The notes below the pieces were generated by a model. It was not told the origin of the DNA, did not search any database, and saw only the letters and a program-made list of their open reading frames with translations. The position numbers were made by a program, and so were the translations under genes. From Oopsacas minuta (Eukaryota > Animalia > Porifera), in NCBI GenBank assembly GCA_024704765.1, contig JAKMXF010000144.1:558001-622000 (forward strand): 64,000 bases of DNA. Direction: 5' to 3'. Below are positions 12,319-63,635 of the stretch, piece after piece; positions within the stretch are counted from its first letter, which is position 1, and each line of letters opens with the position of its first letter.

Positions 12319-15300
12319 ATGAACAGAGAGCAGTCAAAGAGTTATTTTGAGAATAAGATCACAGCTCAACCATTTGAACAGGCAAATACTCAGCCTACTG
12401 TTACAGTACCAGACATAACACAGCCTTCTTCTGCTACTGCAGATCTTACTATCTATCAAACTAATGAAAGGCCATTTGTAAGAATATTTGTGTTTATTCC
12501 TTGCCTGATATTGATAATATTTCTAATTGTTTATTTTATAGAAAATATTCGCTGGTATAACAACTATCCCTCTTATCGTCATATTTCTGGTAAGTTATAA
12601 TAACAAAATATTGGGAGCTGTTTCATTATTATTACTATTATTATTATTATTATTATTCAGTATATCTAATTATAGGCATCTTTTGCAATCGTTATCTATA
12701 AAGGAATAGAAACGCCAACTTATCTACCTCTGCTCATCAACCTAATCCGTAAGTTATAGTATATACTGTACCAGGTTATACCCTCTATAATTGTCCCATA
12801 CCTAACCTTCGTTACCCCCTCTCTTCGTGAGAGAGGTACTACTACTATTACTTGGCCAGTATTTGTTAATGTCTCATCAAAACACACTTAAGCCTATAGT
12901 AATTAACTCAAATTATAGTAGTAGTCACAACAGAGTTCAATCAAGCAAGTACATACTAATCCATAGTCTATAATTGTTGTTGTGGGAGATTGTATCCCTG
13001 TGGAGCAGCTGGTAGAACATAGGGCTGTCCTGGGTATACCATAGGGGTTCCCTGTGGGAGGACCGTGGGGTACGTACCTGGCACAACTTGGAAAGGAAGG
13101 GGTTGCTCAGGGACAGTAGGGGGAGGTGGGTAAGCTGCTTGCAGGCTCTGGGGTGCTGGAGGGTAGGTAGGGTAGTTGAAATCAGGTATGAGAGAGGGAG
13201 GTTGTTGTTCCTGTGTACCAGGGGGAGGATATTGAGGGGGGTACTGCGAGGGTTGTTGGTACACAGGGAGAGCTTGCTCTTGTACTATTACCTGTGTGTG
13301 TCTGTACGCATCACTTGATTCTTTGAGTAGTTTCTGGTAGAAAGCCATAGCCTCTCTAAACTGTACATTTAAATCCATTAATCTATCATATTTGGATTGA
13401 TAATGCTGTATTTTCTGGTTAATTAATGGACGCATTAATTCACAGTGTTGCTCTAGTTCCTTCAATGTTTTATCTTCTACAGAGGCTTCTGAATGTGCAT
13501 CAGCTTTCTTCAACATTTCTAGAGTTAAATCTAGTTTCTCTTCGTTTATATCTATTTTCTTTCCGCGATCTTCTTTTTCTTTTCTCTCCTTAGCGCGCTC
13601 TTTCTTAGCTTGAGACTGTCCGGCTACATGTTTAGACACGAAATTCTTGGGAAATAGGCCTACCTTGCCTCTCAGCTGACCTTTCCACCAGTTTTCGTCA
13701 CTGTTGTCCAAAATCTCAATAACCTAACAATAGCAATAATATTACATACCCAAGGGACCGCGATAATTACTTCTATATAAGCGGGTATTCCGGCATAATG
13801 GGAGTTGAGTGTAGTATACAACAATAAATAAATTAAAGTAATTCCATCTAGACTATTTATACTTACATCCCCTGATTTGAAATTGAGCTCGTTTTCCTCT
13901 CCAGCATCGAAATCGTACAAAGCTTCATACCTATCTACATTTCCTTTCTTCTGCACACTCCCTCCTGTACCAATACCTCCTCCTCCTCCTCCTCCTAAGG
14001 ATAATCCCTCCATTGCTGGGTACATACTACTAACACCAGCTGTAGCTCCCAGTCTCTGTTCCTCTTTGAGAGAAGCTGCTATAGCTTTCTTCATATCCTC
14101 ATCTTCCTTCTTCTTCGCTACCTCATCAGTAGTCTTTGGAGGTTTATTTTCACCCCCTGCTTCCTCTGCATCTGGGAATTTTATTCCATCCCTCTTCAGC
14201 ATGTGATAAGCTACACATAATAAGTTCATGTCAGGATCGTGTTCATTCTCAGTCGCCCAATTATGTAAAAGCCCTCTCAATCTATCTCTGACTCTGTCAT
14301 GTAGCTGACTCACTTGTCCTAGGAGACGACGTAGCTCATCAGTGAACTCCCTCTTAGCCAAGAGGATCTGGAACTTCTTCCCACAATTACTGTAGCAAGC
14401 ATCTAGCAGTGTAATCGCCTTCATTGCTACATTGGGATTAGGGTTCCTCAGACGTTTCATAATAACGTTGAGGTAATTCTGTGGTGTGTTACCATGCGAA
14501 GCAGTAATCTGGTGACATATAACTATTATAGCTGTCCAATCCTCTTCCTGAGTTTTGTCACTGGTTACTTTTGTCACTTCATCTTCTATTGACGGCATTC
14601 TAGAATATTCTAAAGCTTAGACAATGGTATTATAATTATTGTAATATAATGTAAGGCATTATATTCTTATTACTTATGTATGTAACTATGGATTCATTGA
14701 CGATACAAACATTGTGCAATAATTATGATTTCACCCTTTCTGTATACAAATCTACACTGATGATGATGGGCAGATATTATAATTTTTGCCTTTTATAGTG
14801 ATAATCCTGGTCACTGGACTTGTTGTAAGTATTCTTTTTATTCTCTAACGATCTCATGTTGTACCTTAAAGTCAATATTATCCCCAATATTTGTATTTAC
14901 ATATGATATTATATATGTATATTATTTAGTACTTTTGGTATTTCAGAGGCACAATGGTAAGTTATAATTATGCATAAATACAAATATTCATAGACATACT
15001 TGCCAACCTGAGTGGAGGAAAACGTGGGACGTAAGGTACTACTTTAGCGGAACGTGGCATATTTGTATTAGACTGGACTACAAAAATGTGGGACAATTAA
15101 GGTCTTTGGCAAGTTTTGGCGGGACATTATCCTCAACACATGTCCGAAAAAACGGGACAGTTGGCAAGTATGTATATAATTTGTATCCATAAACTTTATG
15201 ATATACACATTATCCTAGTCCTACACCATGATCTGGTATATCGTAATCTACGCTATACTAACAGTATCGCAGTGTATTTTCATTGACATATTTGCTCTCG

Positions 15301-15437
15301 TGACGATATCACCTAGCTCTAGTGGACCCGCTACCCCCCATACTATTCCTGCTATCCCTATTAATACATCCAATACTACAAAGCATTTACTCTTTACTAA
15401 TCCAACTACTACTATATCACAATTGGATCTGTCATAG
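12319..15437 (+). CDS. Orphan small multi-pass membrane protein (183 aa, ~3 TM helices), 6 exons; hosts STAM in intron 3
   Basis: Exons 12319-12477, 12542-12589, 12676-12748, 14799-14824, 14930-14956, 15219-15437; all GT-AG (donors gtaaga/gtaagt), phases 0,0,1,0,0 join into one 552-nt frame: ...TNERPF|KIFAGITTIPLIVIFL|ASFAIVIYKGIETPTYLPLLINLIL|IILVTGLV|YFWYFRGTM|SYTMIWYIVIYAILTVSQCIFIDIFALVTI... No homolog recognised. Confidence 0.7.
12625..12657. repeat. (ATT)n microsatellite in intron 2 of the orphan TM gene
   Basis: About 11 ATT units with one ACT interruption. Confidence 0.9.
12968..14598 (-). CDS. STAM: Signal-transducing adaptor molecule (ESCRT-0; VHS-UIM-SH3-GAT), 2 exons, 495 aa
   Basis: Exons 14598-13867 and 13723-12968 (phase 0, gtaagt...ttag). 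VHS (EEDWTAIIVIC...NPNVAMKAITLLDAC), UIM (KEDEDMKKAIAASLKE), SH3 split by the intron (ALYDFDAGEENELNFKSGD|VIEILDNSDENWWKG...GLFPKNFV), GAT region, P/Q/Y tail. Confidence 0.95.
13749..13813. mobile_element. MITE remnant in the STAM intron (same family as 57123 and 58300)
   Basis: Shares caagggac-gcgataattacttctatataa with the copies at 57123-57264 and 58300-58479; ends ggagttgagtg, a degenerate TIR. Confidence 0.6.
14995..15172. mobile_element. MITE with 13-bp perfect TIRs, 178 bp, in intron 5 of the orphan TM gene
   Basis: CATACTTGCCAAC ... GTTGGCAAGTATG; internal repeated gggac motifs; no clear TSD, superfamily not assigned. Confidence 0.7.
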
Positions 15438-26828: not shown

Positions 26829-29800
26829 ATGACTAAAGTATACCTCGAGAGCTCAGAGGGTAAGAAGATTCTGGTTAAGAGAGATCTGCTACAGAATCTC
26901 GGTACTTTGAAGAAACTAGTACAAGGTAATTTATCATTAGTCAATAGACATTGCATTTATTCCAAATGGTTGCAAGATATTTTATTAAACTTAAACTGCA
27001 TTTACATAACTGATTCTACAGATTTAGGTTGTGAGGAAGATGAAGTTATCCCTCTTCCAGCAGTACCAGCTAAAATACTGAAAAAGGTATAATTATTATT
27101 ATCCAACACACGACACATATACACAAAAAATAAATATTAAATTCAACAAAGAGTTTGTATGTATACACCTTTTATTTCTTCTTATAAGCATGCACCGTAT
27201 CAACGAACTTTTTCACGTTACCAATGTCAGTTGTTGGGAATATTCCATTTCCTACATTAGCAATGCATTTATCAGCTCCTAACATTTTAATCATACTCTT
27301 GGTCATTTTTTCTATTTCCTTCTCATCTGCTAGTAACGCTACTGGATCCAAGTTACCCATTAGCACTTTCTTATCTCCTATTTGCTTCCTTGCTATATCT
27401 GGTTCTATTGTCCAGTCAATACCAATGATTTGGTAGTCCAACTTTCCCAATTCTTCTATAGCATAATGTACTCCTTGCAAATATAGCATAATCGGTACAT
27501 CTGATGATAACCTCTGCTTAATTTCCTTTGCTATCTCCTTCAGTTGTGGATAACAGAACTCCATGAACTGCTGCTTACCTAGAATACCAGTTAGTGAATC
27601 TATTAGCATTAGCACCTGAGCTCCTGCTTTGTATTGGTGTATCAGGAAGTCAATAACTACACCCGTTAGGTCGTTCAACAGCTGATGGGAAGTTTCTTTA
27701 TATAGATATAGCCAGGATTTAGCTCGAAACCATTTCGTCTCTCCCAATCCTTCCACGAGGTAGGCGAGAAGAGTCCAGGGTGCGAGAGAGAACCCAATCA
27801 ATGGAACCCTACCATCTAGCTCATAGCTTACTAAACTTATCGTGTCTAAGATCGGTTTCACCTTCTTTTCAACTTCTATATCCTTCTCCAACCTGTCTAT
27901 ATCACCGGGAGTCATTAACGGATTTGTTATTGTGAGATCCCCTCTCTCACTCTGCTCAATTTTTATTCCTAGGATTTTAAGTAAGACAAAAGAATCCGCG
28001 AATATTATAACCGCATCAACATCGAAATATTCCAAAGGCAGCTGAGTTAGTTCACTAGATAGTCTAGCGTTCTGATAAATCGTTTCCAATTTGTTCATGT
28101 TACAAATCTCTGTGAATTTAGGTAGATAGTGCCCGCTCTGTCTCAGCATCCACACTGGTATTTTCTCAACCTTCTCGCCTCTAGCCAGTCGTATTATGAC
28201 GTCATTCTTCAGTTTAGCCGGCGCCTTGGATCTGGTGATTTTCAACAGATTCTCACTACTGTTCATCATTATTTATTGATATTTATTGCTTATTTAAAAT
28301 TAATGGATACTGTATGGTCTATAATGGCTCTAAGATTGTGGTCAGATTACATTGAGCCATTTATCCTGTAATCATACACTAATGGTTGGAATAAACTGCA
28401 ACATAAACACATTCATTTTGCTGTATAGAAAATTATTTATTGCATTATAATCCATTTGTGTATTATTAAGTTCATACATACACACACGTGAACTAATTCT
28501 ATTATTGAGGATGCATAAGCTCTGATAATTAATTATTTGTAATAATCAATTTCTTCTATTCGTATTAATTGTTCTTTCAGATATCACCTGTCTGTCTACG
28601 TTCTATAATTTCCTTTTCGTGATTATTCTTTGGATTTTCTGTTTCCTTTATGCTACAGATTTCGGCTATTTCCCTTCCTTCTGAAATATATTTAAAACTT
28701 GACATTTTCAACATTTAATTGAATATATTATGCTAAAGGTTTTACAATGGTGTGAACATGAGATTCAACTTAATGATACTCAGCTATCTCTCTCTACTTC
28801 TCCTGGCTCCTTAACAACAGCTCATATAGTGAGAGGAGATCGAATAGAGGAGATTTCTTCTCGGATCAGACCTACACAAATTTTACTCAATAAGGATAAG
28901 CCATGGAAAGTTGATAACGATATTTGGGAACAGGAATTTTTGAATAAGAATAAGACTATTTGGCATCCACTTCTATTGGTTTGTTACATTAGAGCATTAT
29001 TTTATATCTTTCCATATTTGTATTCAAGATGTTGACTTTTCGTTGTATTCATTCAATCAGTTATCTGATATTAAAGTGGTTTATATTGCATTAAATTCGT
29101 AACACACAAGTACATTTATCTTTGACACATCTGAAAAATGTGAAAATTGGTGTCATGTCAGTATCTAAGACTATTTTTATTGGGCCAATATATATTATTA
29201 CTATACAGATTCTTGTTATTATTATTCACAATACATGTTTAACACATATAATACTTACACACGAATACTCTAGATGCAGTCTAACTCAATATGAGAATGT
29301 ATCTAGTTTAAACTTTTGTATCTGTCCCTTCTCCTGATCACACACAATGAATACTCCCTCTTCATTAATACAGGTACCATGATAATGATTCGAGTGCCAA
29401 GCGTTTAGCTTTTCTTTACCTAGTTTATAAACTAGCGTCCCTACAGGGTTTGTGACGTATATTACTCCATTGTTTGTGTCTGTCACTACTATATCATCGT
29501 TATCTCCCAATACTAGTCTACCAGTCAATAGACTACTCCTTGGAATATCGAGATATATTTGTTTGTACATTTCTCCAGTTAGCTGATACATATAGATTGA
29601 TGGCAATCCGCTATGTAACACTATAACTTTCCTGTCAATTGTCACTGATACTGAGCATGGATCTTTCAGGTCTCCTTTATTACCGATGAAGTGACTATGT
29701 GAGTGATTGAGTAGCGCCTGCACTCTATTGTGTTTCTGCTCACAAACAAATATATACTTTTTATATACACATAATCCAGTTGGACCGCCCAGTTCATATT

Positions 29801-32800
29801 CTCCAGTTAAATCTTTGCCTATTTCTTTGATGAATCTTCCTTCCTTGTCATACATCTGTATACGGTTCTGGTTTGTAACTGATATATAGAGATGTTTGTC
29901 AGAAACCGCGAGGTCTCCCACGCGAACTCTCGTGCCAAGTGAATGTTTGCAAGATGTATGTTTAATCGGCCTTAAGTTGGAATCTGTTATTTCTATTCCC
30001 TGACTGGATATAATATAATAATCTCCATCACTGTGTTGTCTAATGAAGTACGGCTTGAAGGGTAGGTCGATAAGCTCCTGTGGATAAATACTGCTTGATA
30101 CTGTAATCTCTCCTACATCATCAAATGATACAGGTGGTGACATCTCCTTGGTTGAGAATTTTATTTCCTCAATTTCTGTAACCTTTGAATCGTCGATCTT
30201 TTGGTTAAGAGCTTTCATACAGAATATACGTAAGTTATCTGCTTCGTTACAAATCGGTGTTTCTGACAGTAAACTATTCATCTTTTCCAGATCCTCAACG
30301 AGTTTAGAATGTTCGTTTATCTTTTCATAATAATTCTGCTCTATTCTATCTACGTTATCCAGGAGGATAGTTTTTCTCTTTTGCATCCTTTCTTCAAGTT
30401 CCTCAAAATACTCATGGATTTTCTGTCTAACTTCGTTCCAGTAAGATTTACCTGCCATTTTATTGTGTATATTATTATCCTTAAAATTTAATGAAACTTC
30501 ACCTTTAAATACTAGCAGCAGAACATGTAGCAAGTTTGGTAAAGTGAAACCTTACAACTTTCAGTTTATAAAGAGGTTCCGGCTTCGCATTTAATTATTT
30601 ATCTTTCTACAGACTTCTGAAAATACTTTTTTGGTACTTTTACAGATAAATATTTCTTGAACCTAATTCTTGATATTTATGTGTATTTTCAATTCTGTCA
30701 ACGAACAATGATTTTGTCCGAATTAAACAGGACTAATGACATACAGAAGAACTTTTCTCCAAAACAGATGATCTATTATTATACTAATTGTATAGGAATA
30801 ATATTCGTATAAGACTTACTTCAGTTAGTAGTAGTACGTGGTTGAAGTTTGCCGTCTGTGTATGTCTTATCCAAGTTCTGTAATTCAATTTTTTTAAGGA
30901 AAAATCTATTCGGATAGTACGTACTAAATTTATTTCCTGAAGGCAAGGGTGCCGAATTTCTAACAACTTGTACGATCCAGGGGTCCAGACATATATTTTG
31001 TCTTAGCTAAATGGGGCTGTAACCAAACGAGGTGGGCGGCTCGGGGCCCAACAGCTCTCCCGGGGTTATGCCCCTACTTAAAGGTTGATTTGTACTACAC
31101 TTAGACAATTTACATATAAGGCATCGAACGATCTAAAATAGAAATTATTGAACCCTGAGTCAATTACTTCAGATGCAGGAATTAATTCATGATATTATAA
31201 CGAGCACAGTTATTACTAGAACTATTATTCTGCTAATATTTGTATTTGTCAGTATTTTTATTGAACATAACAATCTATATTATTAAATCTCAATTGTTGT
31301 TTGTTTGTTTGTTTGTTTGTTTGTTTGTCCGTTGTCATGGAAAGGATTTACGGTATGCAATTTTGAAATGGTCGCGTAACTATGTATTTATCGTGTTTAT
31401 CAAGGAAGTAAATAGAATTCAATAAAACTGCACTAAACATATCGAACGTGCTGAATCCGATTTTGACACTTTTGGATTAATCATATGTAAATTTATTGTT
31501 GTTTTTATGAATATAAAGTAAACAAATAAGCAAAATCTCATAATTCACGTAGATACTTGCTCTCAACGGCTCCAAAGGGGGTTGATCTTACAAAATAATT
31601 CAATAATATATATACCATATATGTATATTTGTGAATTACATTACGTTATAAATAAAGTTCAACTTATGAGGTGAATAATTGTTAATTTGAAAATTCGTAG
31701 TTGGAATTAAGAAATAATATAAAAGTGAGTATTTAAGTTAACAATACTATTGTTTATAGTACTGAGAGGATCCTATTCATTGGAGAGGTGTTGGGTAGAT
31801 TGTCCCTCCTCTTCTTGGTGCTGATCCCCTTACTCTTTCCTTCTGCCTCTGAGAGCCTAAATGTGAGATCAGCTGCTGGGTCATCATCTCCATGTAGTCC
31901 ATGTCCCATTCCAAACGGTCGAAGTTGTTGTTGCCGCATTTTCGCATTTTCGAATTCTCGCTGCTTCTTTATTTTTATCATTTCCTTCTCATGAATTTGT
32001 TGTCTCAGTTCCATGAAAGATACCTCAATATCTTCCCCTTTATGCTGCTCCTTGAATGTCTGATACTCCATCCAGTATGAGAATATTACTCGGAACATCT
32101 CAGCTTGAGGCTCACGGAATAAATAAGGACCTACAGGTTTCCTTTGCAGTTTCTCCACCATTTCTTGACTCAAATCTACTTGTATTTTAGGTGGAACTTT
32201 GCTTTGTAGGAAACAATTTACAATGACATTTATCTTCAACTGTAATACAGCTTCTGGCGTGTGTGCATGACATAACTCTTTATAACGTTGTATTTCTAAC
32301 CAGAAATTCAGGTCATTCTTCAAATGTTCATCTTTGCTACTTTTCAGCTCAATAAATGTCTCAAACGGTTTACAAGTGATCGGGTTTAGTATTGCTTTAC
32401 GACAGTTGATTATATCTCTACTGTTAGTCATCCATCTACTCTCGAATATTTTGCTTTTCCACTCGTCCTGACTTCCTGCCACTCCCCCACCTTCTTTCTG
32501 ATGTTGCTGTTGTAATGGGGCTCTATAGTGGTCCTGACCTGGATACATGTACTGCAAGAACTCCCGTGTCTTTACGAATACAGGTAACCATCTGTGTTCT
32601 AATCTAGCTTGTACTTGTTTTTGTCCCTCGATCAGAACCGGGGTAGGGGGACGTTGTGGCACCTTACGTCCTAGACCTCCCAGCATAATCATTCTATTCT
32701 GGGCTTCCTTACTCGCTGGGCTGTTTAATCCGAAGTAATAGTTCTTTGTTAAATACTGCGAACGAATAAGTTTAGCTTTCGCATTCCTTAACTTTGACTC

Positions 32801-35578
32801 TTTTCCTGGAATTTTTCTGAAAGATTCTACTTCCATCCAGAACATTATATCCACTGATGCGTGTCTAGAATCAAGAAAGCTTTTGAATAAGTTTAATAGT
32901 GTATTTTCCTGTATAACCTGTTGTATAGTGTATCCCATGGGTGTGGCTAGTCCTGTACTTGAGGTGATGGGAAGTTTTGATTTATCTGATTCAATTTCAT
33001 TTCCTTCATTCACATCTGGTAATATATCTTCATCTTCAATTACATCTATGTCTACTGCGAGTTCTTCTAGAAATTCCTCATCATCATTTTCCCAATGAGA
33101 GAATGCTACTTCATCTGTTTTAGCTTCTTCTAAGAAAGTACTCTCTTCTTTCAAACAAGCTGTCCATGGTTCAGTTAATACATCTAGTACGTGTTCTTCC
33201 AATGAATCAAATAAATCCTCAAAAGCTGGGTAGATACTTAGGCCAATCTTGTTAGCGATTTCATACCTACAGCTCACATACATATTTCCTGATGTAAGCA
33301 CGTATTTACTGAGTATAGTTTTAGCTCTTGCTTCTGTTTGAAAAGGATTGAAATCCTCGGTTAGGAAACCATCTTTGAAGTTTTGTATTTCTCTCCAACA
33401 AAGTAAGCAATTCCTCCAGTTTATATTTCCAACTTTCTCGATATATTGTTGGAATATTCCTCCAGCCTTCCTATGCTCTATAGACAGGCATATTGTCAGC
33501 TGTTGATTGAGTTTACTATCCTTTGTAGGGACTATTACCTTAGGGAGAGGTACTGATTTGCTCCTCCTTCTCTTCTGTACTTCACTATGAAACATAACTG
33601 TATGGGATATCGGTAGAGCAACTGATTCAGCTAGAGAGTATTCATTGATATCTGGCAGTTTATTGATAGCTGTAATCGCACTGAAGCTCCTGACAGTAGA
33701 CATATGACAGGCTGGATTAGGAGTAGAGGAGAGGGGGAAATGGTTAGGAGAGAGTTGAGGGAAGATGAGAGGACTGGCTAACTCCCTAACTAACTTTGGA
33801 TCACATTTAAGTGCATTCTTCTGAGAATCATTCAAGACACTGACTCTACCTTGATGTGTAGTAGGACGGGATCTCTTATTATCATCTGTTGGAGATTTAA
33901 TTCTGCGTTTACTGGCACTCATTAGATATCTTGGACACCAATAGCTCACTAAGGAATGCAATACACTTGTTTGTAATGCAAATATATCCTCGCGTGTTAC
34001 TGGTTGAGTTTTGTGTATCCATCTTCCTTTAGCTATTTCGCATTTTGCACCAGGCCGTAGGTACTTTTCCTTAATTTCCTTGAATCCTGTCAGTGCCTCG
34101 ATCTCACTATCACAGTTAGAAAGACGTTCACACTCCACCCAGTATAAATAATCATTCTCTCCAGTTGTATTGACTAGGAATTTCTTGAACGCAGCTATTT
34201 CCCTTTTGGAACAAAATATTTGATAATCTACTCCATGTCTGTTCTGCTCGCTACTCAGTGCTATGTTAGATATACTCTTTGAGAGAGGAACAGATGGATG
34301 GTTAGCTCTTCTCTGCTCCATCCCACCCAGAAGACTAGCTAGATTATATTCACAGTATAGATCACTCTTTAGGAAAGAAGGTAGTCTCTCTTTGCAAATC
34401 CAATCTACCGTCCTTGTTCTGTCTAGAGTAGCTACATAGTTATCCTCACGGACTGAAAGAGCATGACTGTGTGTAACAGAAGGAGGAATAAGACTGTGTA
34501 CTTGTAATGCTTCGTGTGCATCAACAGATTGATCATCTCGGTCAAGATGAATTTCTTCAAATTGTTTAGTTTCCAGAACATATTGAATTGTTCTCGGAAA
34601 GATGGGTAGAGCAAGATAACAATTAATATATTCGATGAAAAGCTCTTCAGTAAGATATCTTTCAAATTGTGGTTCTTCCATAGTTATGTGGTTTACCCTT
34701 TTTATTATTATATAAACAATATATCTGTTTATTCGCAGTATTTGCTTGTGTTCTAATTGGTTCTTTGTGTTACTGTATTGTCTGTTTGTCAATAGCTTTG
34801 TCAATAGTATAGAATGTATGGTTAAATTAGAACCCGTTTACTCACACTAGATTTTGTAATTATCCATAGTCTCTTTACCCGAAAATGTAATAGGTGGCCG
34901 AAATACCAAACTGGAATTGCAGATATTCGCTACTATTATTTTGTCAGTAATTATACAGTCACAATTTTAATTTTATTCTGTAAATGATGCAAATAGCAGG
35001 AAAACTATTGTAGCAATCATGTAAACTCAGTCAAGTACTACTCCGTCTGCAACGAACACTAAATATATGTCTAAACCTACTGAACCAATATATATATTCC
35101 TTGGGTGAATACAGCTAATTTAGATTAACTTTAGTTTTGAAGAGCTAACAAATTGAAATTTCAATTGATCACTATTCTATGTATACAATTGTTCCAGCTA
35201 TTGCTAGATTGGAATTTTCCTAACCATCACTTTATTGATAGCAATTTGTCATTTTAGGTTGCCAACTATTTAGATCAACGCAGATTATCTTATTCTATCT
35301 CTGGTAGAGTTGCAGATTTAATTAAAGGTAATCTGACATTTATTTTAACTGAATTATCCCATAAATATTTGGTTAATGCAAGAGAAATATTTATGTTCCA
35401 AACTTCCATTTCAATCAATTTTGTATCAGGTAAAGATCCAGAGAAAATCAGAAAACTTTTCAACGCTCCTAAGAGGTCAACAGATCTAGACCTTATATCT
35501 CTCCACTCATTCTCTACAACTCTCACTTCCTTGTCACCCTCTCTAAGTATTTCCAGCATAACTCCTGAAAATATTTAA
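26829..35578 (+). CDS. SKP1: Divergent SKP1-family protein, 5 exons, 206 aa; hosts three antisense genes
   Basis: Exons 26829-26925, 27022-27086, 28739-28978, 35258-35327, 35430-35578 (phases 1,0,0,1; 621 nt). Reads KVYLESSEGK...LVQD|LGCEEDEVIPLPAVPAKILKK|VLQWCEH...IWEQEFL...PLLL|VANYLD...VADLIKG|KDPEKIRKLFN, colinear with SKP1 (ILKKVIQW, WDQEFL, AANYLD, GKTPEEIRKTFN). Probably a paralog; the final exon's 3' end is less certain. Confidence 0.85.
27172..28269 (-). CDS. UROD: Uroporphyrinogen decarboxylase-like protein (divergent active site), intronless, nested in SKP1-like intron 2
   Basis: LKNDVIIRLARGE...PVWMLRQSGHYLP, DAVIIFAD, VPLIGFSLAPWTLLAYLVEG, GIDWT, LMGNLDP. Confidence 0.9.
   Translation of the reverse strand: MMNSSENLLKITRSKAPAKLKNDVIIRLARGEKVEKIPVWMLRQSGHYLPKFTEICNMNKLETIYQNARLSSELTQLPLEYFDVDAVIIFADSFVLLKILGIKIEQSERGDLTITNPLMTPGDIDRLEKDIEVEKKVKPILDTISLVSYELDGRVPLIGFSLAPWTLLAYLVEGLGETKWFRAKSWLYLYKETSHQLLNDLTGVVIDFLIHQYKAGAQVLMLIDSLTGILGKQQFMEFCYPQLKEIAKEIKQRLSSDVPIMLYLQGVHYAIEELGKLDYQIIGIDWTIEPDIARKQIGDKKVLMGNLDPVALLADEKEIEKMTKSMIKMLGADKCIANVGNGIFPTTDIGNVKKFVDTVHAYKKK
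29286..30458 (-). CDS. Coiled-coil + NHL-repeat beta-propeller protein (TRIM-NHL-like, no RING), nested in SKP1-like intron 3
   Basis: First ATG 30458; BBC-like coiled coil (IHEYFEELEERMQKRKTILLDNV) then NHL repeats (PTGLCV...IFVCEQKHNRVQ, PCSVSV, IVVTDTNNGVIYV, FIVCDQEKGQIQKF). Confidence 0.85.
   Translation of the reverse strand: MAGKSYWNEVRQKIHEYFEELEERMQKRKTILLDNVDRIEQNYYEKINEHSKLVEDLEKMNSLLSETPICNEADNLRIFCMKALNQKIDDSKVTEIEEIKFSTKEMSPPVSFDDVGEITVSSSIYPQELIDLPFKPYFIRQHSDGDYYIISSQGIEITDSNLRPIKHTSCKHSLGTRVRVGDLAVSDKHLYISVTNQNRIQMYDKEGRFIKEIGKDLTGEYELGGPTGLCVYKKYIFVCEQKHNRVQALLNHSHSHFIGNKGDLKDPCSVSVTIDRKVIVLHSGLPSIYMYQLTGEMYKQIYLDIPRSSLLTGRLVLGDNDDIVVTDTNNGVIYVTNPVGTLVYKLGKEKLNAWHSNHYHGTCINEEGVFIVCDQEKGQIQKFKLDTFSY
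31274..31480 (+). mobile_element. 5' fragment of a Helitron-like element with a (GTTT)n tract
   Basis: A|TCTATATTATTAAA start followed by (GTTT)n at ~31297-31327; no 3' hairpin/CTAG found, so the end coordinate is approximate. Confidence 0.45.
31754..34681 (-). CDS. RGS22: Regulator of G-protein signalling 22, intronless, 975 aa, nested in SKP1-like intron 3
   Basis: ATG 34681; N-terminus FERYLTEELFIEYINCYLALPIFP, WICKERLPSFLKSDLYCEY, and RGS-like domains (FKKFLVNTTGENDYLYWVECE; FKSFLDSRHASVDIMFWMEVESFR; LKNDLNFWLEIQRYKELCH). Confidence 0.9.
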   Translation of the reverse strand: MEEPQFERYLTEELFIEYINCYLALPIFPRTIQYVLETKQFEEIHLDRDDQSVDAHEALQVHSLIPPSVTHSHALSVREDNYVATLDRTRTVDWICKERLPSFLKSDLYCEYNLASLLGGMEQRRANHPSVPLSKSISNIALSSEQNRHGVDYQIFCSKREIAAFKKFLVNTTGENDYLYWVECERLSNCDSEIEALTGFKEIKEKYLRPGAKCEIAKGRWIHKTQPVTREDIFALQTSVLHSLVSYWCPRYLMSASKRRIKSPTDDNKRSRPTTHQGRVSVLNDSQKNALKCDPKLVRELASPLIFPQLSPNHFPLSSTPNPACHMSTVRSFSAITAINKLPDINEYSLAESVALPISHTVMFHSEVQKRRRSKSVPLPKVIVPTKDSKLNQQLTICLSIEHRKAGGIFQQYIEKVGNINWRNCLLCWREIQNFKDGFLTEDFNPFQTEARAKTILSKYVLTSGNMYVSCRYEIANKIGLSIYPAFEDLFDSLEEHVLDVLTEPWTACLKEESTFLEEAKTDEVAFSHWENDDEEFLEELAVDIDVIEDEDILPDVNEGNEIESDKSKLPITSSTGLATPMGYTIQQVIQENTLLNLFKSFLDSRHASVDIMFWMEVESFRKIPGKESKLRNAKAKLIRSQYLTKNYYFGLNSPASKEAQNRMIMLGGLGRKVPQRPPTPVLIEGQKQVQARLEHRWLPVFVKTREFLQYMYPGQDHYRAPLQQQHQKEGGGVAGSQDEWKSKIFESRWMTNSRDIINCRKAILNPITCKPFETFIELKSSKDEHLKNDLNFWLEIQRYKELCHAHTPEAVLQLKINVIVNCFLQSKVPPKIQVDLSQEMVEKLQRKPVGPYLFREPQAEMFRVIFSYWMEYQTFKEQHKGEDIEVSFMELRQQIHEKEMIKIKKQREFENAKMRQQQLRPFGMGHGLHGDDDPAADLTFRLSEAEGKSKGISTKKRRDNLPNTSPMNRILSVL

Positions 35579-55656: not shown

Positions 55657-58600
55657 ATGTCACAACCTGATTCACCGGTATCACCGGACAAGGAGTCCCC
55701 TCCTCGCCTCTTTATAACACACATTGAAGCAGAGAATTTCAAATCTTACGCAGGCAAGAAGACAATTGGTCCATTTATACAGAAGTTTACCTGTATTATA
55801 GGACCTAATGGTAGTGGGAAATCTAACGTAATTGATGCTGTACTGTTTGTATTCGGATATAGAGCTAGGAAGATACGCTCTAAGAAGTTATCTGTGTTGA
55901 TTCACAAGTCAGCTGAGTTCCCTAATTTTCGTAGTTGTAAAGTTACTGTGTACTTCCAGCAGATTAGAGATATTGCTGATGACCAATACGAGGTGGATAT
56001 ACGTACAAATTATCTCAATAAAATATTGACTTATTTCTTGTATAGGTAATACCAGGTAGTGATTTTCAGGTATCACGAATTGCTCATCACGACAACACTT
56101 CTGAATACTTTCTAAGCGGAACTAAAGCTACTTACAGAGAAGTTACAGATCTGCTTAGAAACTACGGGATTGATTTAGATCACAATAGGTTTCTTATCCT
56201 ACAAGGAGAAGTATGTAGTTTTTAGAATATCAATCAAGTTAATTATTCATTTGATATGTAGGTAGAATCTGTTGCTCTTATGAAACCAAAGGGGCAACAC
56301 GAACATGACGAAGGAATGTTAGAATATCTAGAAGATATAATTGGTACAGCAGATTATAAAGATACTATTGAGGAATTATTTAAGGAATATGAAGAATTGC
56401 TTAATGCGAGAGGCGAAAAAGTTCATCGGTAAATGAAGATGACTAGCATAAATTAGATTTGTATTATTTGTATTATTTTAGATTAAAATTTGTTGAGAAG
56501 GAATTGAGTCAGTTAGAATCAGCAAAAGAAGAAGCAGAACAATTCTTGAAGCAGAGAGATAGAGTTGCTCTATCTAAGTATAAATTATTTCACAAAAACT
56601 TATTTGAATTGAAAACAGGTAGAGGAGGAGTTGATGAGAATTTAGAGGCATTGATAGTGGCGATTACTAAGATAGAAGATCAATCAGAAGAGGTAAATAT
56701 GATACTACGTACGTATTAATGTATTCATAACTATTTAGTATAATCTCTCTACACTATATCATATGAAGTGAGACGTGTACTGTATGCTTGTTTCTAGCAA
56801 TCAAATCTAGTCAAAGCAAAGCAGCATGATTTGAAGAAGAAAGGTAAGGTACTCGATAAGATGAAGGAAGCAGAGGAGAGTAAGACTGCTGCGCTGACTG
56901 AGTGTGAAAGAAGAGATGTAAAAGCTAGAGAAGATCAGAAAACAGTTAAATCTAATTTAAAATCATTCAACAAGACTCTTGAAAAAGAAAGACAGAAATT
57001 TGAGGACTTACAAACAGCTCCAGAGAGACTAACTAAACAGATTGAAGAAGGAGAGAAAACTAAAGTAATTATTGAAAAATCTCTCTATATAGAGGATCAG
57101 AAGTAAATATTGTAGGGATATGTAGTCAACTCCAGTTAAATCGAAGCTCAAGGGACCGGAGTAATTACTTATGGAATACGTGTTACTTTTATATTTTACA
57201 ATTTAAGAATTGGATACAAGCGGATATTCGATATATCCGTGTTCTATATAACAGGAGTTGATTGTAGTTTGTATAGAATGCAATAAATATAATTACGTAT
57301 GTATATAGATTGGAGCAGATAATGTCAGGGCTTAGAGAAGCTACGAGAGACTTACAGCAAGAAAAGGAGCAGAAAGTTAGTGTGCTATTACAAGCTAAAG
57401 TTAAAGTTAATGATGCTAAATCAGAGCAAGACATGGCTAGTACTGAGTATGACTTATACATGAGACAGGTCAGAGATCATGAAAGTCAAACAAAAGACAA
57501 ACAATTTAATCTGGAAGATTCTCAGAAGAAACTACAAGGTATGCTCCAAACATATTTCAGTGTTATTGTCATTTTAATAATTTTATTTTGACAATATAAC
57601 TATAAGGTAAATACCCGTTATAAGAATAACACGAGATATATCTTAATTTATTATGTGCTAATTGGTTGTAGTAATTACTTTACTCTTCTTGGGTAGTTCT
57701 TGACTGGATGTGGTTCCTTTCCTCTTACGGGTTGTTGGGGTAGAGCTACGACTTGATGTCTGCTTTGGAAATGATCCACTACCCTCTCCCTCATCCATGG
57801 AATATTCTAGAAAGTTCTCAACATCTGTCATACTACCAGACTCAGGTAGAGTCTCGTATTTATGTTTAATAGCTCCCCATTCAAATTCGGCAGATAGCAA
57901 TGCAGATTTCAGCTCCAATAGTAATAATACATTATTTCTGAGCACGTTAAATTGTGTAGTAACATTCTCTGTAGCAATTGGCTTAGTTCCTATACCCAAT
58001 TCATCTAGTAATTGCTCCATTGCTTTAGCTCGTTTGTTAGTCATTGTATTAGGAACTTTAAGTCTGTAACTACGGAGATATGGACCTGCACCTCTCTCCT
58101 CGATTATCTTATTCAGATGTTTTGTGATGTTCCCGCTTCTGTCTCTGTCTCTATCTCTATCCTTCTTACTCTTTTCCTTCTTCTTGCTGGTGCTACTACG
58201 TTTGTTCTTATCAGAACACCTATCGTCACTAATTTCTACTTGCTCTATTAATTTCTGTGCTGTTTGAGCTATTCTCTCTCTTTCCTATATACACATGTAC
58301 AGTTAACACCCGCTATATCGAAGCCAAGGGACAGCGATAATTACTTCTATATAATATATGCTGAATTGTTATAATCGATTAACTGTATGTTACTTTGAGG
58401 GTTTGGGACTATATTTGCACAATTTCAGACTTCCATATAAGCGAGTATTTCTATATATCCGTGTTCGTTGAGTTTACTGTATTTCAGTCTGAACTTACCT
58501 TCCTTCTATATTCCACCTTCTTCACTTCCTCCACTAGATAATCATGCTCTTCAATTTGTTTCTGAGTTCTACCAAATAGAAGTTCTAATTGCTCCTTCCT

Positions 58601-61600
58601 CAGCTTTTCATGTTCTACATCATATGCTACTAGTGACTCAGAGAGGTCTTCTCCTGGTATAGCCCTTAACTTGACTATACAGTTACATACTGTATAATAG
58701 CGATCCTTCAGCTCTTCAACTGATCTAGGGGGAAATCTGGCTATATCATACCTATCCTAAAAGAGAATCATTAATCACATTCCAAATACCTATATATCTA
58801 ACCAAGCTACCTTAATAATAATGAATCTCAGATCAAATCTATCACATAGCTCCAATAAATGCTTAGTCTCTTCCATGCTCCACTCAGAGTCCTCTAAATA
58901 TATTTTATATTCCTCTTCCGTATATTCAGGTATTCCTACTCTATCATTGTGTCTAGCGAATTGATATTTCTTGTTCTCCTCCCCAGCTCGTACCCAATGA
59001 TAGAGAATAGCATTGTCTGTACGAGCCTGGTTAATAAACGGTGTCCATTTCCAAGATCTAACTTTTTGAATACCTAATTTAGCTTTGACGTGTTTATACC
59101 CTAGACTGGTGTCTATTTCTATATCTGGGAGGAGTTTCTGTACTCCCTCTCCTTCTCTGAGAGCTTTTACTTCTCTGCTAGTACCGTCAGGTAGTAATGC
59201 AGCCCCAGTAGTTCTCTTCTTAACTCTCTTACTATGACCATGTGAGAGAGCTTGCTCTTTCAGACTTGTATTAGTTATTTCGCGGTTTTCTTCACCTTTT
59301 CTTCCGGCTAATATATCTTGAGCATCTTTTGCACTAGTCATTGTGTTATGTACTGGGATAGATACAATCAATATTTGTGAATATTTTAAGGGAAAAATAC
59401 AAAATTCTTAAATTTAACTACGTTTAATGAAATTTATATTTGTTTGCAGCAAACAGATCGCTTTGTGAAGAATTGAAACAAAAAGTTCCTAGACAGAGGA
59501 AGGAGATAGATAACTTTGAGATAGAGATTGATCAGTACACACAAATAGAGACTACATTAGCTCCTAAATTAGAGGCTACACAGCGTCAATTGGTGGAAGG
59601 GAGATCTTCTCTCTCAGCTCACAAAACTAGAGGTTATTGCAACTTATTTCATTAGATATTTATATATAGAGTGCATAAAGAACTGGGTTCATTTTATCTC
59701 ATAAGAAGGTTCAGTTACCTGAAGTAACATCTCTATGATTAAGATCCATAACCTTTGAATTGTAATCATTCAGGTGTACATATTTACTTTACCATTCTGT
59801 TGTTAGGGAAGTTGTTAGAGGGTTTAATGATGGCAAAGGAGGCTGGTCACATAAAAGGGATTATTGGCAGACTTGGAGATCTTGGTAAGTAGAACATAGT
59901 GTAACTAATGTTATCTATTTAATATACACCCTCATTCTACAACAGAAAATCAGTTAGAAAGTTTCTGTTAGAAACTATTGTACTTGAATTATAAATGTTT
60001 ATTCAATTTTGCTAAAGAAATCTTTTAATTCTAAAATGGCTACGAAAACTGTAATAAATGAGCCTCCTCGTGACATAATCACACCCCAGGTACAAGCGTC
60101 CCCAGATACTTCATCAGGTCCCAACAAGACCCTCTCCCCTACCCCCTGCATCCTAGTGGTCGGCATGGCGGGAGCTGGTAAGACTACTTTTGTACAGCGA
60201 TTAACTGCACATCTTCATTCTAAAGCCGCACCTCCTTACGTCATAAACCTAGACCCAGCAGTTCTTAAACTCCCCTACCCAGTCAATATAGATATCCGTG
60301 ATACAGTAAACTATAAGGAAGTAATGAAGCAGTATGGATTAGGTCCAAACGGGGGTATAATGACTGCATTGAACTTATTCTCCACTCAATTCGATCAAGT
60401 TCTACAATACATAGAGAAGAGAGCTAACGAACACAGTTTGGTTATATTCGATACTCCAGGACAACTTGAGGTATTCACATGGTCAGCCTCCGGTACTATA
60501 ATAACAGACACACTAGGTCTGACACTCCCTACCATCGTGGTGTATGTATTGGACACATCTCGTAGTGTAAATCCTACTACATTTATGTCAAATATGCTGA
60601 ATGCCTGTTCTATCCTATACAAAACTACTTTACCATTCATTCTGGTAATGAATAAGTGTGATATTATTGATAACGGATTTGCTGTGGAATGGATGAAAGA
60701 CTTTACTGTGTTCCGGCAGGCGTTATCCCAGGAGACCAGCTTTATGTCTAATCTTGTACAATCCATGAGTCTAGCACTAGAAGAGTTCTACTCTAATATT
60801 TCTAGCGTGGGAGTATCCTCACTGACTGGTGCTGGTATAAATGAATTCTTAGCTGCTGTAGATAAGGGAAGAGTTGAGTACTGGGATTATTTAGCCAGGA
60901 GGAAGAAGATTAGTGAGCAAAGAGAAAGGGAAATGAAGGAAAAGACGATTGACAAACTTACTGAACTCAAGAAACAAAGTGGAAAGGGCACCAAGCTTAA
61001 ATTAGGACTAGACCTCGCCGTACAGCCTGAATATGAATATGAAATAGAGGATGATATCTATGGTGTAGGGGGAGAGAGTCCTGATGAAGGGGACCTGGTA
61101 CATGATGAGGATTTGGATTTAGATGAATCTTGAATTTTACGGAATTTTGGAATTAATTATTAGCCCATCTGGATATTACAAATTTACAAAATATTTTATG
61201 ATAGCAGCTGAATGTATATGCCCAACTAGCAACTGATACACAGTAGAAACTCTATAAGCGGGGAGTGGGGCATAATTTAGAAAAAAATATGCCTCACGCC
61301 ATTGAAATTTTCCTCTCTAGGTGGGGAATTCAACGATAAATTTTCTTGAATAATCATTTTTGTGCTATATTTCCGTATTTATCGCTATGATGGAATGAAA
61401 TTTTTGGGTTTCTCAGGAGAAATTTATTTAACAAACAACTTTTGGGCATATTCTTATAATCAAATATCATTGAAAAACAGTCATTGGAGGAAGTGACATA
61501 TTGACTCGAAAATCTCAGCTTAAGACATTTACCTTCCACTTTTTCAAATATTGTACTACTTGTAATTATTGTATCCTGTTTCTCTAGCTTCCATAGACCA

Positions 61601-63635
61601 GAAGTATGACGTAGCCATCAGCACTGCATGTCCTTCTTTAGAGAATATCTTACTAGACACAGGTGATACCAGTGTACAATGTATCAACTTCCTGAAGGAG
61701 CATGATCTGGGTAGAGCTACTTTCTCAGTCTTAGAACGGATGGAAAGGAATAGAGCCCAGGCAATGAAACCATTTCACGGACCTGAGAACGTTCCCAGGT
61801 TATTTGATCTTCTTCATGTGAGTTGTATTTATCAATAACGTATTTGTGGTAACTTAGATTGTCCATTCTAAACTCTACTCCTTTTCAGATACAAAATGAT
61901 GCATATATACCTGCGTTATATTTCGTAACACAAGACACACTAGTTGCTAACAACCTAGAAGAAGCTACACGTATCGGTAAGCTAAACAACAACAATTTAT
62001 TCTAGTTAGTTGTATATTTATTGGTGTATCTATCTTGTCAAGGTATGGGGATAGGCACTGAAGGGAAGAGATATAGAGTTGTGACACTGAGTGGAGATGT
62101 GGTGGATAAGAGTGGTACTATGTCAGGGGGAGGGAAACAGGTTTCTAGAGGAAGAATGTCAGCTAACATTCAACAAGAATTCAGCCCTGTGCAGGTTCTT
62201 ATCTTTTTCATTGTTCTTTCCTTCCTAATTACTTTCAAGACGAAGAATTGCTACTAATACGCATAGGCGCCGAAAGTGGGAGGGTCAGAGAGGATAGGTA
62301 CCCCTACGCCCTAGTATTGAGGGAGCGTATACCTAAACTAGTAGTCAATGAGGTACATCCCCTGAGCTTAGGGAGGCTTCGCAGTCATGCTAGTAAGTAA
62401 GAATTGAGTATGACGTCATAATTTTATGAAACTAATCAAAAAGGCAAGGTTCGTCTGGGTCTCGAACCCAGGACCTTCTGCGTGTAAAGCAGACGTGATA
62501 ACCACTACACTAACGAACCAAGATTCTTATTAATTCTTACTGTTATGACTTTTGTAAAAACATCTTAAGAAAGTTGCTACAAAATAATTGAATGTTTTTG
62601 TTTTAGAAATACACAAATTTGCTAGTATTATTCTATAGAGAGATAAGACTGACGTTGCGAATGTGTATGTGTATAGTAGCAGTTTTGAAAACACTGACTT
62701 ATCATTGTATTTATGTCCCTATTTATGTCCAATCTGTATATAATATGCATTATCATAAGTTCTGGCACAATCTATTGTTAATATTTGCAAACATAATCTC
62801 TGCCAGAGAAACTTGTGTTGATAATATGTAATTCCTAAACTGATTAGCTTACCGGCCTTTCGGATACGCGTATTAGCCAAGTAAAGGAAATGTCAATCCA
62901 AATAGGATACAAGATTAGTGTTGCACGTAATCGCATTTATAACTGCCCTTATTAAATGTGTTACTTGTTTTATCTATTCCTCGTTACGCTACGTGTATAG
63001 AATTGCCCTGTGATGAGCTGTATTACAGCATATTGCTCCTACTGAGTGTGTACTTGATGAGGTGTTATACTGAGGGCTTATGATGCAAATTCGTTTGCAA
63101 AATATATCTAATTAATGGTGGAAAAATATAATTTTTGTTGTGGTTTGTGTTTACTTAACCCATTATTTGGAATTTATTTTCCACTCATTTTCAGATTGAA
63201 AGTCTTGAGAAAGATACAGCTAAGCTAAAGCATGAACTGGAAGAGTATCAGAAACGCAAGCGAGTAGCTGAAAGCAAGTTATCTCTCCTACAAACTGAAG
63301 TACAGGAGAATGAGAGTAGATTACAGAAAGCTAGCCTGGATATTGACTTCTGTTCTGCACAATGTGAAGTTTACAAAACCCAGCTGAATGAGCTCATGAG
63401 TAACAGAGTTACTGTGGATCCTAAGGAAGTAGAGAGGCTAGAGAAAAGATACAAGGAATGTCAGGACGTGTATAATCAAATACATACCAAGTTCTCTAAG
63501 TCTGAAGCTGAAGTAGAGAAGTTAGATGAACGGATTAATGCAGTAGGAGCTGATAAGGTTCAAGCACAGCAGAAAAAAATTAATTCTGTCAAGAAAGAAT
63601 TGGATGATCTGAAAAGTAATATCTCTAAAGCAAAT
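55657..63635 (+). CDS. SMC4: Condensin subunit SMC4, at least 12 exons, 3' part beyond the window; hosts DMAP1, GPN1 and tRNA-Val
   Basis: Exons 55657-55992, 56046-56210, 56262-56428, 56482-56692, 56798-57102, 57309-57538, 59450-59632, 59807-59884, 61588-61817, 61889-61976, 62043-62194, 63195-63635; phases all compatible. ENFKSY, Walker [37 protein letters not shown]|VE, hinge GIIGRLGDL|[29 protein letters not shown]...SGTMSGGG. Confidence 0.95.
57123..57264. mobile_element. MITE in SMC4 intron 5, 142 bp
   Basis: tagtcaactccagttaaat ... atataacaggagttgattg|ta; internal sequence shared with 58300 and 13749. Confidence 0.7.
57658..59341 (-). CDS. DMAP1: DNA methyltransferase 1-associated protein 1 (SWC4/EAF2), 3 exons, 471 aa, nested in SMC4 intron 6
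   Basis: Exons 59341-58811, 58756-58499, 58284-57658 (phase 0, GT-AG, 1416 nt). [17 protein letters not shown]...LYHW, SANT domain [24 protein letters not shown]|DRY...[40 protein letters not shown]-like [10 protein letters not shown]. Confidence 0.93.
58300..58479. mobile_element. TA-flanked MITE, 180 bp, filling most of DMAP1 intron 2
   Basis: TA|CAGTTAACACCCGCTATATCGAA ... GAGTTTACTG|TA; family sequence shared with 57123 and 13749. Confidence 0.72.
60036..61133 (+). CDS. GPN1: GPN-loop GTPase 1 (XAB1), intronless, nested on the SAME strand in SMC4 intron 8
   Basis: [83 protein letters not shown]; acidic tail. First ATG 60036. Confidence 0.96.
62438..62442 (-). terminator. RNA polymerase III T-run terminator
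   Basis: TTTTT on the minus strand, 5 nt downstream of the tRNA acceptor stem. Confidence 0.65.
62447..62519 (-). tRNA. tRNA-Val (UAC), in SMC4 intron 11
   Basis: GGTTCGTTAGTGTAGTGGTTATCACGTCTGCTTTACACGCAGAAGGTCCTGGGTTCGAGACCCAGACGAACC(T): perfect 7-bp acceptor stem, anticodon arm TCTGC-TTTACAC-GCAGA, T arm CTGGG-TTCGAGA-CCCAG, intact A and B boxes. Confidence 0.95.

What the first reader, a model, noticed from the sequence alone, without database searches (positions are those of the whole stretch)
26829..35578. A 621-nt SKP1-like CDS spread over 8.7 kb, with three whole antisense genes in two introns
Seen: intron 2 (27087-28738) holds UROD; intron 3 (28979-35257, 6.3 kb) holds both the NHL gene and the 2.9-kb RGS22 CDS. 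All three guests are intronless and antisense. The junctions ILKK|VLQW and PLLL|VANYL restore SKP1 colinearity exactly. The first three intron positions match human SKP1 as I recall them (c.97 phase 1, after K57, after L105), so the host introns appear ancestral and the guests later insertions. Several guests per host, repeated three times in 64 kb, suggests nesting is a genome-wide organising mode here (inference).
Basis: partly seen in the sequence, partly recalled or inferred. Interest (0 to 1): 0.85.

Follow-up and report, generated by a model that had tools for sequence, protein, structure and literature searches.

The report
Split SKP1-like gene hosting three genes
A small, divergent SKP1-family gene of the glass sponge Oopsacas minuta really is spread over 8.75 kb with three complete opposite-strand genes inside two of its introns, and a distant relative shares the layout; such nests are already known to be very common in glass sponges, so this mainly corrects a fragmented annotation.

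Summary
Five GT-AG exons (26829-26925, 27022-27086, 28739-28978, 35258-35327, 35430-35578) join into a 621-nt, 206-aa ORF. Single-exon minus-strand URO-D, NHL-repeat and triple-RGS genes lie in introns 2 and 3.

The window is Oopsacas minuta (JAKMXF010000144.1). GenBank splits the host into a 76-aa and a 101-aa gene and leaves exons 1-2 unannotated. The likely reasons are RNA mapping capped at 5-kb introns (intron 3 is 6.3 kb) and Augustus settings that forbid nesting.

Comparative evidence supports the junctions instead. The most distant of five related glass-sponge assemblies keeps all five exons, interleaved with the same guests. Exon lengths are 100/65/240/70/155, all splice sites are GT-AG, and pN is 0.21 against a saturated pS of 0.80.

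The four other relatives keep the guests but only decayed host relics, so the nest is old and the host was lost at least twice.

Abundant, conserved nesting in glass sponges, undercounted in O. minuta, was published in 2023. This scan has noted it many times in this genome, once with follow-up (s1-304904). The human intron positions were not testable here.

The parts
26829..26925 (+). SKP1-like exon 1 (ATG, 97 nt, donor in phase 1)
   Evidence: Weak Skp1_POZ match, profile positions 2-30. Ortholog exon at L008 20811-20712, 100 nt, same phase. Not annotated in GenBank.
26926..27021 (+). intron 1 (96 nt, GT-AG, in frame and stop-free)
   Evidence: It is 507 nt in L008, so the in-frame property is not conserved.
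27022..27086 (+). SKP1-like exon 2 (65 nt)
   Evidence: Skp1_POZ profile positions 34-52. Exon 1 + intron 1 + exon 2 read together score 27.1 bits against a gathering score of 21.9. L008 20204-20140, also 65 nt.
27087..28738 (+). intron 2 (1652 nt), which holds the URO-D gene
27172..28269 (-). guest 1: uroporphyrinogen decarboxylase, single exon, 365 aa
   Evidence: Pfam URO-D, E 2.1e-96. Self-hit P0001 and orthologs of 69-79% identity. AATAAA overlaps its stop codon, which lies 85 nt from host exon 2.
28739..28978 (+). SKP1-like exon 3 (240 nt): VLQWCEHE, a lineage-specific insert, then WEQEFLNKNK.IWHPLLL
   Evidence: L008 17544-17305 is also 240 nt with the same boundaries. Annotated in GenBank as a separate 101-aa gene, 28730-29035. 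No Pfam or PDB hit on its own.
28979..35257 (+). intron 3 (6279 nt), which holds the NHL and RGS genes
29286..30458 (-). guest 2: NHL-repeat protein, single exon, 390 aa
   Evidence: Pfam NHL, E 1e-7. Annotated as 390 aa, single exon. Syntenic orthologs in all five relatives.
31754..34681 (-). guest 3: protein with three RGS stretches (RGS22-like architecture), single exon, 975 aa
   Evidence: Pfam RGS, E 2.5e-28, three stretches. Annotated as 975 aa, single exon. Syntenic orthologs in all five relatives.
35258..35327 (+). SKP1-like exon 4 (70 nt, VANYLD...ADLIK)
   Evidence: L008 7817-7748 is 70 nt and 100% identical in amino acids, although synonymous sites are saturated. The GenBank 76-aa model uses an internal acceptor at 35284 instead.
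35328..35429 (+). intron 4 (102 nt, GT-AG, in frame and stop-free)
   Evidence: It is 67 nt in L008.
35430..35578 (+). SKP1-like exon 5 (149 nt): GKDPEKIRKLFN, then a Ser/Thr/Leu-rich tail and TAA
   Evidence: Pfam Skp1 C-terminal domain, 17.2 bits, E 0.0046, profile positions 15-29 only. The tail is partly conserved in L008, pN 0.23 against pS 0.74.
35067..35104 (+). first exon of the existing 76-aa GenBank model; probably not part of the real gene
   Evidence: Reconstructed from the annotated range and product length. The stretch VANYLDQR, which that model skips, is 100% conserved in L008.

Best explanation
This is one functional, five-exon gene of Oopsacas minuta for a divergent SKP1-family protein of 206 aa. 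It has a Skp1 BTB/POZ domain, a lineage-specific conserved insert in the loop region, the core helices, and a Ser/Thr/Leu-rich tail where the last F-box-binding helices would be. It is transcribed on the + strand as a pre-mRNA of about 8.8 kb and spliced at canonical GT-AG sites. Introns 2 and 3 contain three independent single-exon genes on the opposite strand (URO-D; NHL-repeat; triple-RGS), each presumably with its own promoter inside the host intron. It is an ordinary example of the nested-gene architecture already described as pervasive and conserved in glass sponges.

Shown: the anatomy, the family assignment of the N-terminal domain, purifying selection on all five exons, and conservation of the interleaved order.

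Inferred: that the exons are joined in mRNA, that host and guests are transcribed independently, and any interference between them.

The layout is at least as old as the deepest split among the six glass sponges compared. The host was later lost in several lineages while the guests stayed.
For: 1. The exons join into an open 621-nt frame with four GT-AG introns.
2. Skp1_POZ scores 27.1 bits, above the gathering score of 21.9. The Skp1 C-terminal domain scores E 0.0046, and it is listed as a weak hit on the annotated 76-aa fragment.
3. In assembly ERZ20067936 (L008, plus haplotig L009/L006) all five exons sit at the interleaved syntenic positions. Their lengths are 100/65/240/70/155 with identical phases and GT-AG sites. 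Protein identity is 66%, pN 0.21 against pS 0.80, and exon 4 is identical in protein.
4. Ungapped DNA identity is 0.76 on the exon side and 0.40 on the intron side of the eight boundaries. In-frame stops lie directly before exons 3 and 4 in both species.
5. The UROD tree puts that species outside all the others.
6. The guests are single ORFs in the same order in all relatives.
7. The published annotation mapped RNA with a 5000-nt intron cap and used Braker1/Augustus. It also deleted genes under 100 aa that had no RNA coverage. The 76-aa fragment survived, which implies some RNA coverage of exons 4-5 (this last step is inference).
8. Nested genes are reported as abundant and conserved in glass sponges and undercounted in O. 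minuta.
Against:
- No full-length spliced protein exists in the protein collections searched.
- Exon 3 alone has no detectable similarity to SKP1, and piecewise PDB matches are insignificant.
- The C-terminal Skp1 domain is below Pfam's threshold.
- The host is absent or decayed at the syntenic place in four relatives, including the closest one, so it is dispensable in those species.
Confidence: 0.85

Rival explanations
1. The pieces are separate small genes, as in the GenBank annotation (a 101-aa protein from 28730-29035 and a 76-aa protein from 35067-35578), and exons 1-2 are non-coding.
For: This is the deposited annotation. The 101-aa ORF has its own ATG at 28730.
Against: In L008 an in-frame stop lies immediately before exon 3 and there is no equivalent ATG. 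Conservation stops exactly at the splice donor in both species. The eight residues VANYLDQR, which the 76-aa model skips, are 100% conserved. Exons 1-2 are conserved and carry a Skp1_POZ domain above Pfam's threshold. The annotation pipeline could not find a 6.3-kb intron or predict nested genes.
Confidence: 0.05
2. The host is a dying or dead gene in O. minuta too: an intact-looking but unexpressed or non-functional remnant of an ancestral SKP1 paralogue, on its way to the relic state seen in the relatives.
For: The gene has decayed at the same place in four relatives, including the sister taxon L004. No transcript-derived protein is in the collections.
Against: The 206-codon frame is open with all eight splice sites intact. 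pN is far below the saturated pS against L008, which means selection along most of the path separating the two species. The 76-aa model survived a filter that removed short genes lacking RNA coverage.
Confidence: 0.07
3. The exons are brought together only by mis-assembly, or are joined by trans-splicing of separate transcripts.
For: None directly.
Against: The same interleaved order appears in the O. minuta assembly and in two contigs of an independent long-read assembly of another species. The guest order is the same in all six species. All exons lie on one strand in colinear order with ordinary cis splice signals.
Confidence: 0.03

Closest known systems
Nested (intronic) genes of glass sponges, as described for Aphrocallistes vastus and Oopsacas minuta (Francis et al. 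2023, PMC10282587), e.g. single-exon glassin nested inside another gene in both species
   Same: Same clade and the same genome. Single-exon guests lie inside host introns, the layout is conserved between species, and the paper says explicitly that the O. minuta annotation undercounts nests because of the gene-prediction method.
   Different: This particular host-guest set is not described there, as far as the text searched shows. Here a 0.6-kb CDS hosts 5.2 kb of guest CDS in two introns, and the host has been lost in several related species while the guests stayed.
Classic multi-guest nests in other animals, e.g. human NF1, whose intron carries the three small opposite-strand genes OMG, EVI2A and EVI2B (from my own knowledge, not checked with a tool)
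   Same: Several complete genes on the opposite strand inside an intron of a host gene, each with its own promoter.
   Different: There the host is huge and the guests are small. Here the guests are far larger than the host's coding sequence, and the genome is extremely compact.
SKP1 paralogue families and Elongin C (Pfam Skp1_POZ, PF03931; Skp1, PF01466)
   Same: The N-terminal Skp1-type BTB/POZ domain scores above Pfam's threshold. It is colinear with the SKP1 motifs ILKKV-QWC, W-QEFL, ANYLD and GK-PE-IRK-FN.
   Different: The acidic loop is replaced by an insert of about 45 aa with a conserved core (LTTAH.VRGDR.EEISS). The C-terminal part of the Skp1 domain (profile positions 30-48, the last helices that contact F-boxes) is replaced by a Ser/Thr/Leu-rich tail. 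No orthologue was found outside glass sponges.

Membership tests
SKP1 family (Pfam clan of Skp1_POZ / Skp1) | N-terminal Skp1-type BTB/POZ domain (PF03931) above the curated threshold | tested here: met
   27.1 bits against a gathering score of 21.9, E 4.7e-06, two colinear stretches, on window:26829-27089 (exon 1 + in-frame intron 1 + exon 2). The separate exons score 13.5 and 15.2 bits on profile positions 2-30 and 34-52.
SKP1 family (Pfam clan of Skp1_POZ / Skp1) | C-terminal Skp1 dimerisation / F-box-binding domain (PF01466) above the curated threshold | tested here: inconclusive
   17.2 bits against a gathering score of 22.3, E 0.0046, profile positions 15-29 of 48 only. Listed as a weak precomputed hit on the annotated 76-aa product. 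The query had to include the 34 intron-coded residues because the spliced protein has no reference.
Canonical SKP1 (SCF adaptor) | Last C-terminal helices that complete the F-box-binding groove (profile positions about 30-48 of PF01466) | tested here: not met
   No match beyond profile position 29. The residues after KLFNAPKR form a Ser/Thr/Leu-rich tail that is conserved in L008 and runs to the stop codon. I did not scan the window for an alternative downstream exon that could encode these helices.
Nested (intronic) gene pair | The guest gene lies wholly between two exons of the host, on either strand | tested here: met
   Coordinates. The same interleaving is seen in L008.
Nested (intronic) gene pair | The host exons flanking the guests are joined in a mature transcript | not testable with these tools
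No transcript-derived protein is in the collections. The only support is comparative, plus the inference from the annotation filter.
   No canonical SKP1 gene structure could be fetched, and a literature search found none. The positions are identical between O. minuta and L008, which says nothing about SKP1 proper.
RGS22 | Multiple RGS domains in a protein of about 1000 aa; orthology to RGS22 | tested here: inconclusive
   Three RGS stretches in 975 aa.

The most novel reading that the evidence does not exclude
The host-guest block is an old, selected unit and not an accident of compaction. Under this reading, transcription of the SKP1-like host across three antisense genes (a haem-synthesis enzyme, an NHL protein and a ciliary-type RGS protein) tunes their expression. 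The protein itself would be a glass-sponge-specific SKP1 derivative that keeps the cullin-binding POZ domain but has swapped its F-box-binding end for a new tail and gained a conserved insert, acting as a decoy or as an adaptor for non-F-box partners. Repeated loss of the coding host, with the guest order retained, would then mark lineages that rewired this control.
Probability: 0.12. Interest if true: 0.55.

Novelty: new member of a known kind. Interest (0 to 1): 0.3.

Why it matters
It gives a corrected gene model for a locus that GenBank splits into two short proteins and leaves partly unannotated. It also shows a concrete cause: a 5-kb intron cap in RNA mapping plus a gene predictor that forbids nesting. 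This supports the published suspicion that the 83 nested genes annotated in O. minuta are a large undercount.

It adds a dated example. The nest predates the deepest split among six glass sponges compared, and the host gene decayed at least twice while the guests stayed. That bears on whether nests are selected or merely tolerated.

It is not a new phenomenon.

Tried and rejected
- Looking for a spliced, annotated or transcript-derived protein:
  - An exhaustive HMMER search with exon 3 found only the 101-aa genomic ORF.
  - A word-index search with that ORF found only itself.
  - The length filter of the search for homologous proteins cannot reach a 206-aa protein from any stop-free reference here; the longest is 110-113 aa.
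Whole-protein Pfam, PDB and structure-prediction steps were therefore left out. I used the read-through references window:26829-27089 and window:35258-35575 instead; both short introns are in frame and stop-free.
- PDB sequence searches with pieces gave only insignificant Elongin C and SKP1 hits, or unrelated hits for exon 3 and its two-species profile.
- A literature search for SKP1 intron positions found nothing usable.
- Retroposition or transposon signatures around the guests: no flanking repeats, tRNAs or Rfam families.
- The idea that the in-frame, stop-free introns 1 and 4 mark retained-intron isoforms was rejected. Each is expected by chance at about 0.11-0.13, and neither the lengths nor the frames are conserved in L008.
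- The third homologous-protein search was not spent.

Full report
**What is in the sequence**

On the + strand, five segments join into one open reading frame of 621 nt (206 codons plus TAA): 26829-26925, 27022-27086, 28739-28978, 35258-35327 and 35430-35578. All four introns (96, 1652, 6279 and 102 nt) start with GT and end with AG.

Three long ORFs lie on the minus strand:
- 27172-28269: URO-D, 365 aa, Pfam E 2e-96.
- 29286-30458: an NHL-repeat protein, 390 aa from its ATG.
- 31754-34681: 975 aa from its ATG, with three RGS stretches.

The first ORF lies inside intron 2 and the other two inside intron 3. No tRNA, Rfam family or notable repeat lies in the region.

**Source and existing annotation**

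The URO-D protein is found on NCBI GCA_024704765.1, contig JAKMXF010000144.1. JAKMXF is the Oopsacas minuta genome project. The locus fetched from that record is the exact reverse complement of window 17172-38269.

The GenBank annotation has the three guests as single-exon genes but breaks the host into pieces:
- A 101-aa single-exon gene at 28730-29035, which is exon 3 read through its donor.
- A 76-aa gene at 35067-35578, carrying a weak Skp1 Pfam hit.
- Nothing over exons 1-2.

The 76-aa model can be rebuilt as 35067-35104 + 35284-35327 + 35430-35578. It therefore uses an invented first exon and an internal acceptor inside exon 4.

The genome paper's methods explain this. RNA reads were mapped with TopHat using a maximum intron of 5000 nt, which is shorter than intron 3. 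Genes were called with Braker 1.9 and Augustus 3.2.3. The same methods state that genes under 100 aa with no transcript coverage were removed. Because the 76-aa fragment survived, I infer that exons 4-5 have some RNA coverage.

**Is the five-exon gene real?**

The protein collections hold no spliced version: an exhaustive search with exon 3 returns only the 101-aa genomic ORF. I therefore used comparative evidence.

The URO-D guest has orthologues of 69-79% identity on long contigs of five ENA assemblies. All five carry RGS, NHL and URO-D in the same order and orientation, with EF-Ts beyond the RGS gene.

In assembly ERZ20067936 (L008; its second contig gave L009 and L006), all five host exons lie on the opposite strand, interleaved with the guests exactly as in the window:
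- L008 20811-20712 and 20204-20140 beyond URO-D.
- L008 17544-17305 between URO-D and NHL.
- L008 7817-7748 and 7680-7526 beyond RGS.

Further points of agreement:
- Exon lengths are 100/65/240/70/155 against 97/65/240/70/149. Phases are the same, and every intron is GT-AG.
- The proteins are 66% identical. Synonymous sites are saturated (pS 0.80) while pN is 0.21. Across exon 4 and the start of exon 5 pN is 0.03, and exon 4 itself is identical in amino acids.
- Anchored at the eight splice boundaries, ungapped DNA identity is 0.76 on the exon side and 0.40 on the intron side.
- An in-frame stop lies directly before exons 3 and 4 in both species.

This is the signature of spliced coding exons under purifying selection. 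It does not fit independent small ORFs or pseudogene fragments.

**Age of the nest and fate of the host**

A URO-D tree with outgroups places the ERZ20067936 species outside all the others: (L008, ((L004, O. minuta), (L001, L003, L005))). The interleaved arrangement therefore predates the deepest split in this sample.

The other four species keep the guests, but the host survives only as relics at the right places and on the right strand:
- L003 has the end of exon 3 with TGA at both tryptophan codons, and exon 4 interrupted by 60 nt containing stops. No shuffle out of 300 reaches either score.
- L001, L004 and L005 have weaker traces (2-10 of 300 shuffles).
- In L004, the sister of O. minuta, a DDE-type transposase gene sits where exon 3 should be, and the interval that should hold exons 4-5 is only 610 nt.

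Given the tree, the host was lost at least twice. I cannot exclude an intact copy elsewhere in those genomes.

**What the protein is**

The N-terminal part is a Skp1-type BTB/POZ domain. It scores 27.1 bits against Pfam's threshold of 21.9 when exon 1, the in-frame intron 1 and exon 2 are read together, with the two exons matching profile positions 2-30 and 34-53 in order. Exon 5 matches positions 15-29 of the 48-position Skp1 C-terminal domain at E 0.0046, which is below threshold.

Exon 3 alone hits nothing in Pfam or the PDB, even as a two-species profile. It carries the short SKP1 motifs at both ends. Between them lies an insert of about 45 residues whose core (LTTAH.VRGDR.EEISS) is invariant between the two species.

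After KLFNAPKR the protein ends in a Ser/Thr/Leu-rich tail that is partly conserved. No match to the last helices of SKP1 was found.

I therefore file it as a divergent SKP1-family paralogue, not as the SCF adaptor SKP1. It plausibly still binds a cullin through the POZ domain, but its F-box groove is incomplete; this functional reading is inference.

**How it most likely works**

The host is transcribed across about 8.8 kb and spliced normally. The guests have their own promoters in the host's introns. Their poly(A) signals lie on the other strand, so they do not terminate the host transcript.

The URO-D gene has AATAAA overlapping its stop codon, 85 nt from host exon 2, so its mRNA probably ends just short of that exon. 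Convergent transcription could cause interference, but nothing here tests that.

**Comparison with what is known**

Francis et al. 2023 (PMC10282587) report the following:
- 2432 nested genes (12.4%) in the glass sponge Aphrocallistes vastus.
- Nests are often conserved.
- About 60% of genes in both glass sponges are single-exon.
- Only 83 nests are annotated in O. minuta; the authors blame low counts of this kind on gene-prediction settings.
- Glassin is a nested single-exon gene in both species.

Intronless guests are the norm in this genome and not a sign of retroposition.

This scan has noted many such nests in the same genome. One followed-up case, six genes inside UBASH3 (s1-304904), reached the same verdict.

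The claim that the host introns sit at ancestral SKP1 positions rests on recalled human coordinates. I could not test it: no canonical SKP1 gene structure was reachable, and a literature search found none.

**Verdict**

This is a real and well-conserved nested locus, a corrected gene model, and a small evolutionary vignette: an old nest whose host was lost repeatedly while the guests were retained. It belongs to an already described architecture.

Noticed in passing
L004:8614-9651: In the closest relative of O. minuta in the UROD tree (assembly ERZ25069837), a 345-aa DDE_3/HTH transposase gene (Tc1/mariner-like by Pfam) sits between the NHL and URO-D genes. That is where host exon 3 lies in O. 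minuta. Only a faint relic of exon 3 remains, at 8449-8405.
   Followed up: partly
L009:7880-8006: One haplotig of assembly ERZ20067936 carries a tandem duplication of about 63 nt that copies the acceptor site and the first 48 nt of host exon 4. The other contig (L008) has a single copy. Splicing to the second copy would give the normal mRNA.
   Followed up: partly
window 26926-27021 and 35328-35429: Both short host introns (96 and 102 nt) are multiples of three and free of stops in frame, so retained-intron products would stay open. Each is expected by chance at about 0.11-0.13, and the property is not conserved in L008 (507 and 67 nt).
   Followed up: yes
window 28739-28978 (residues 63-107 of the spliced protein): The loop insert of the SKP1-like protein has a core, LTTAH.VRGDR.EEISS, that is invariant between two species whose synonymous sites are saturated. 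It contains an RGD triplet and matches nothing in Pfam or the PDB.
   Followed up: partly
L008:8396-9133 (minus strand); L009:8582-9133: In the relative, host intron 3 also holds a 245-aa ORF (183 aa in the haplotig) on the host's own strand, between the RGS gene and exon 4. It has no Pfam hit and no counterpart in the O. minuta window.
   Followed up: no
window 27166-27175: The URO-D guest has AATAAA overlapping its stop codon, 85 nt from host exon 2. This implies an extremely short 3' UTR and a transcript end just short of the host exon.
   Followed up: no
window 12319-15437 and 55657-63635: Earlier notes on this window report two more nests: STAM inside a membrane-protein gene, and DMAP1, GPN1 and a tRNA inside SMC4. 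I did not check them.
   Followed up: no
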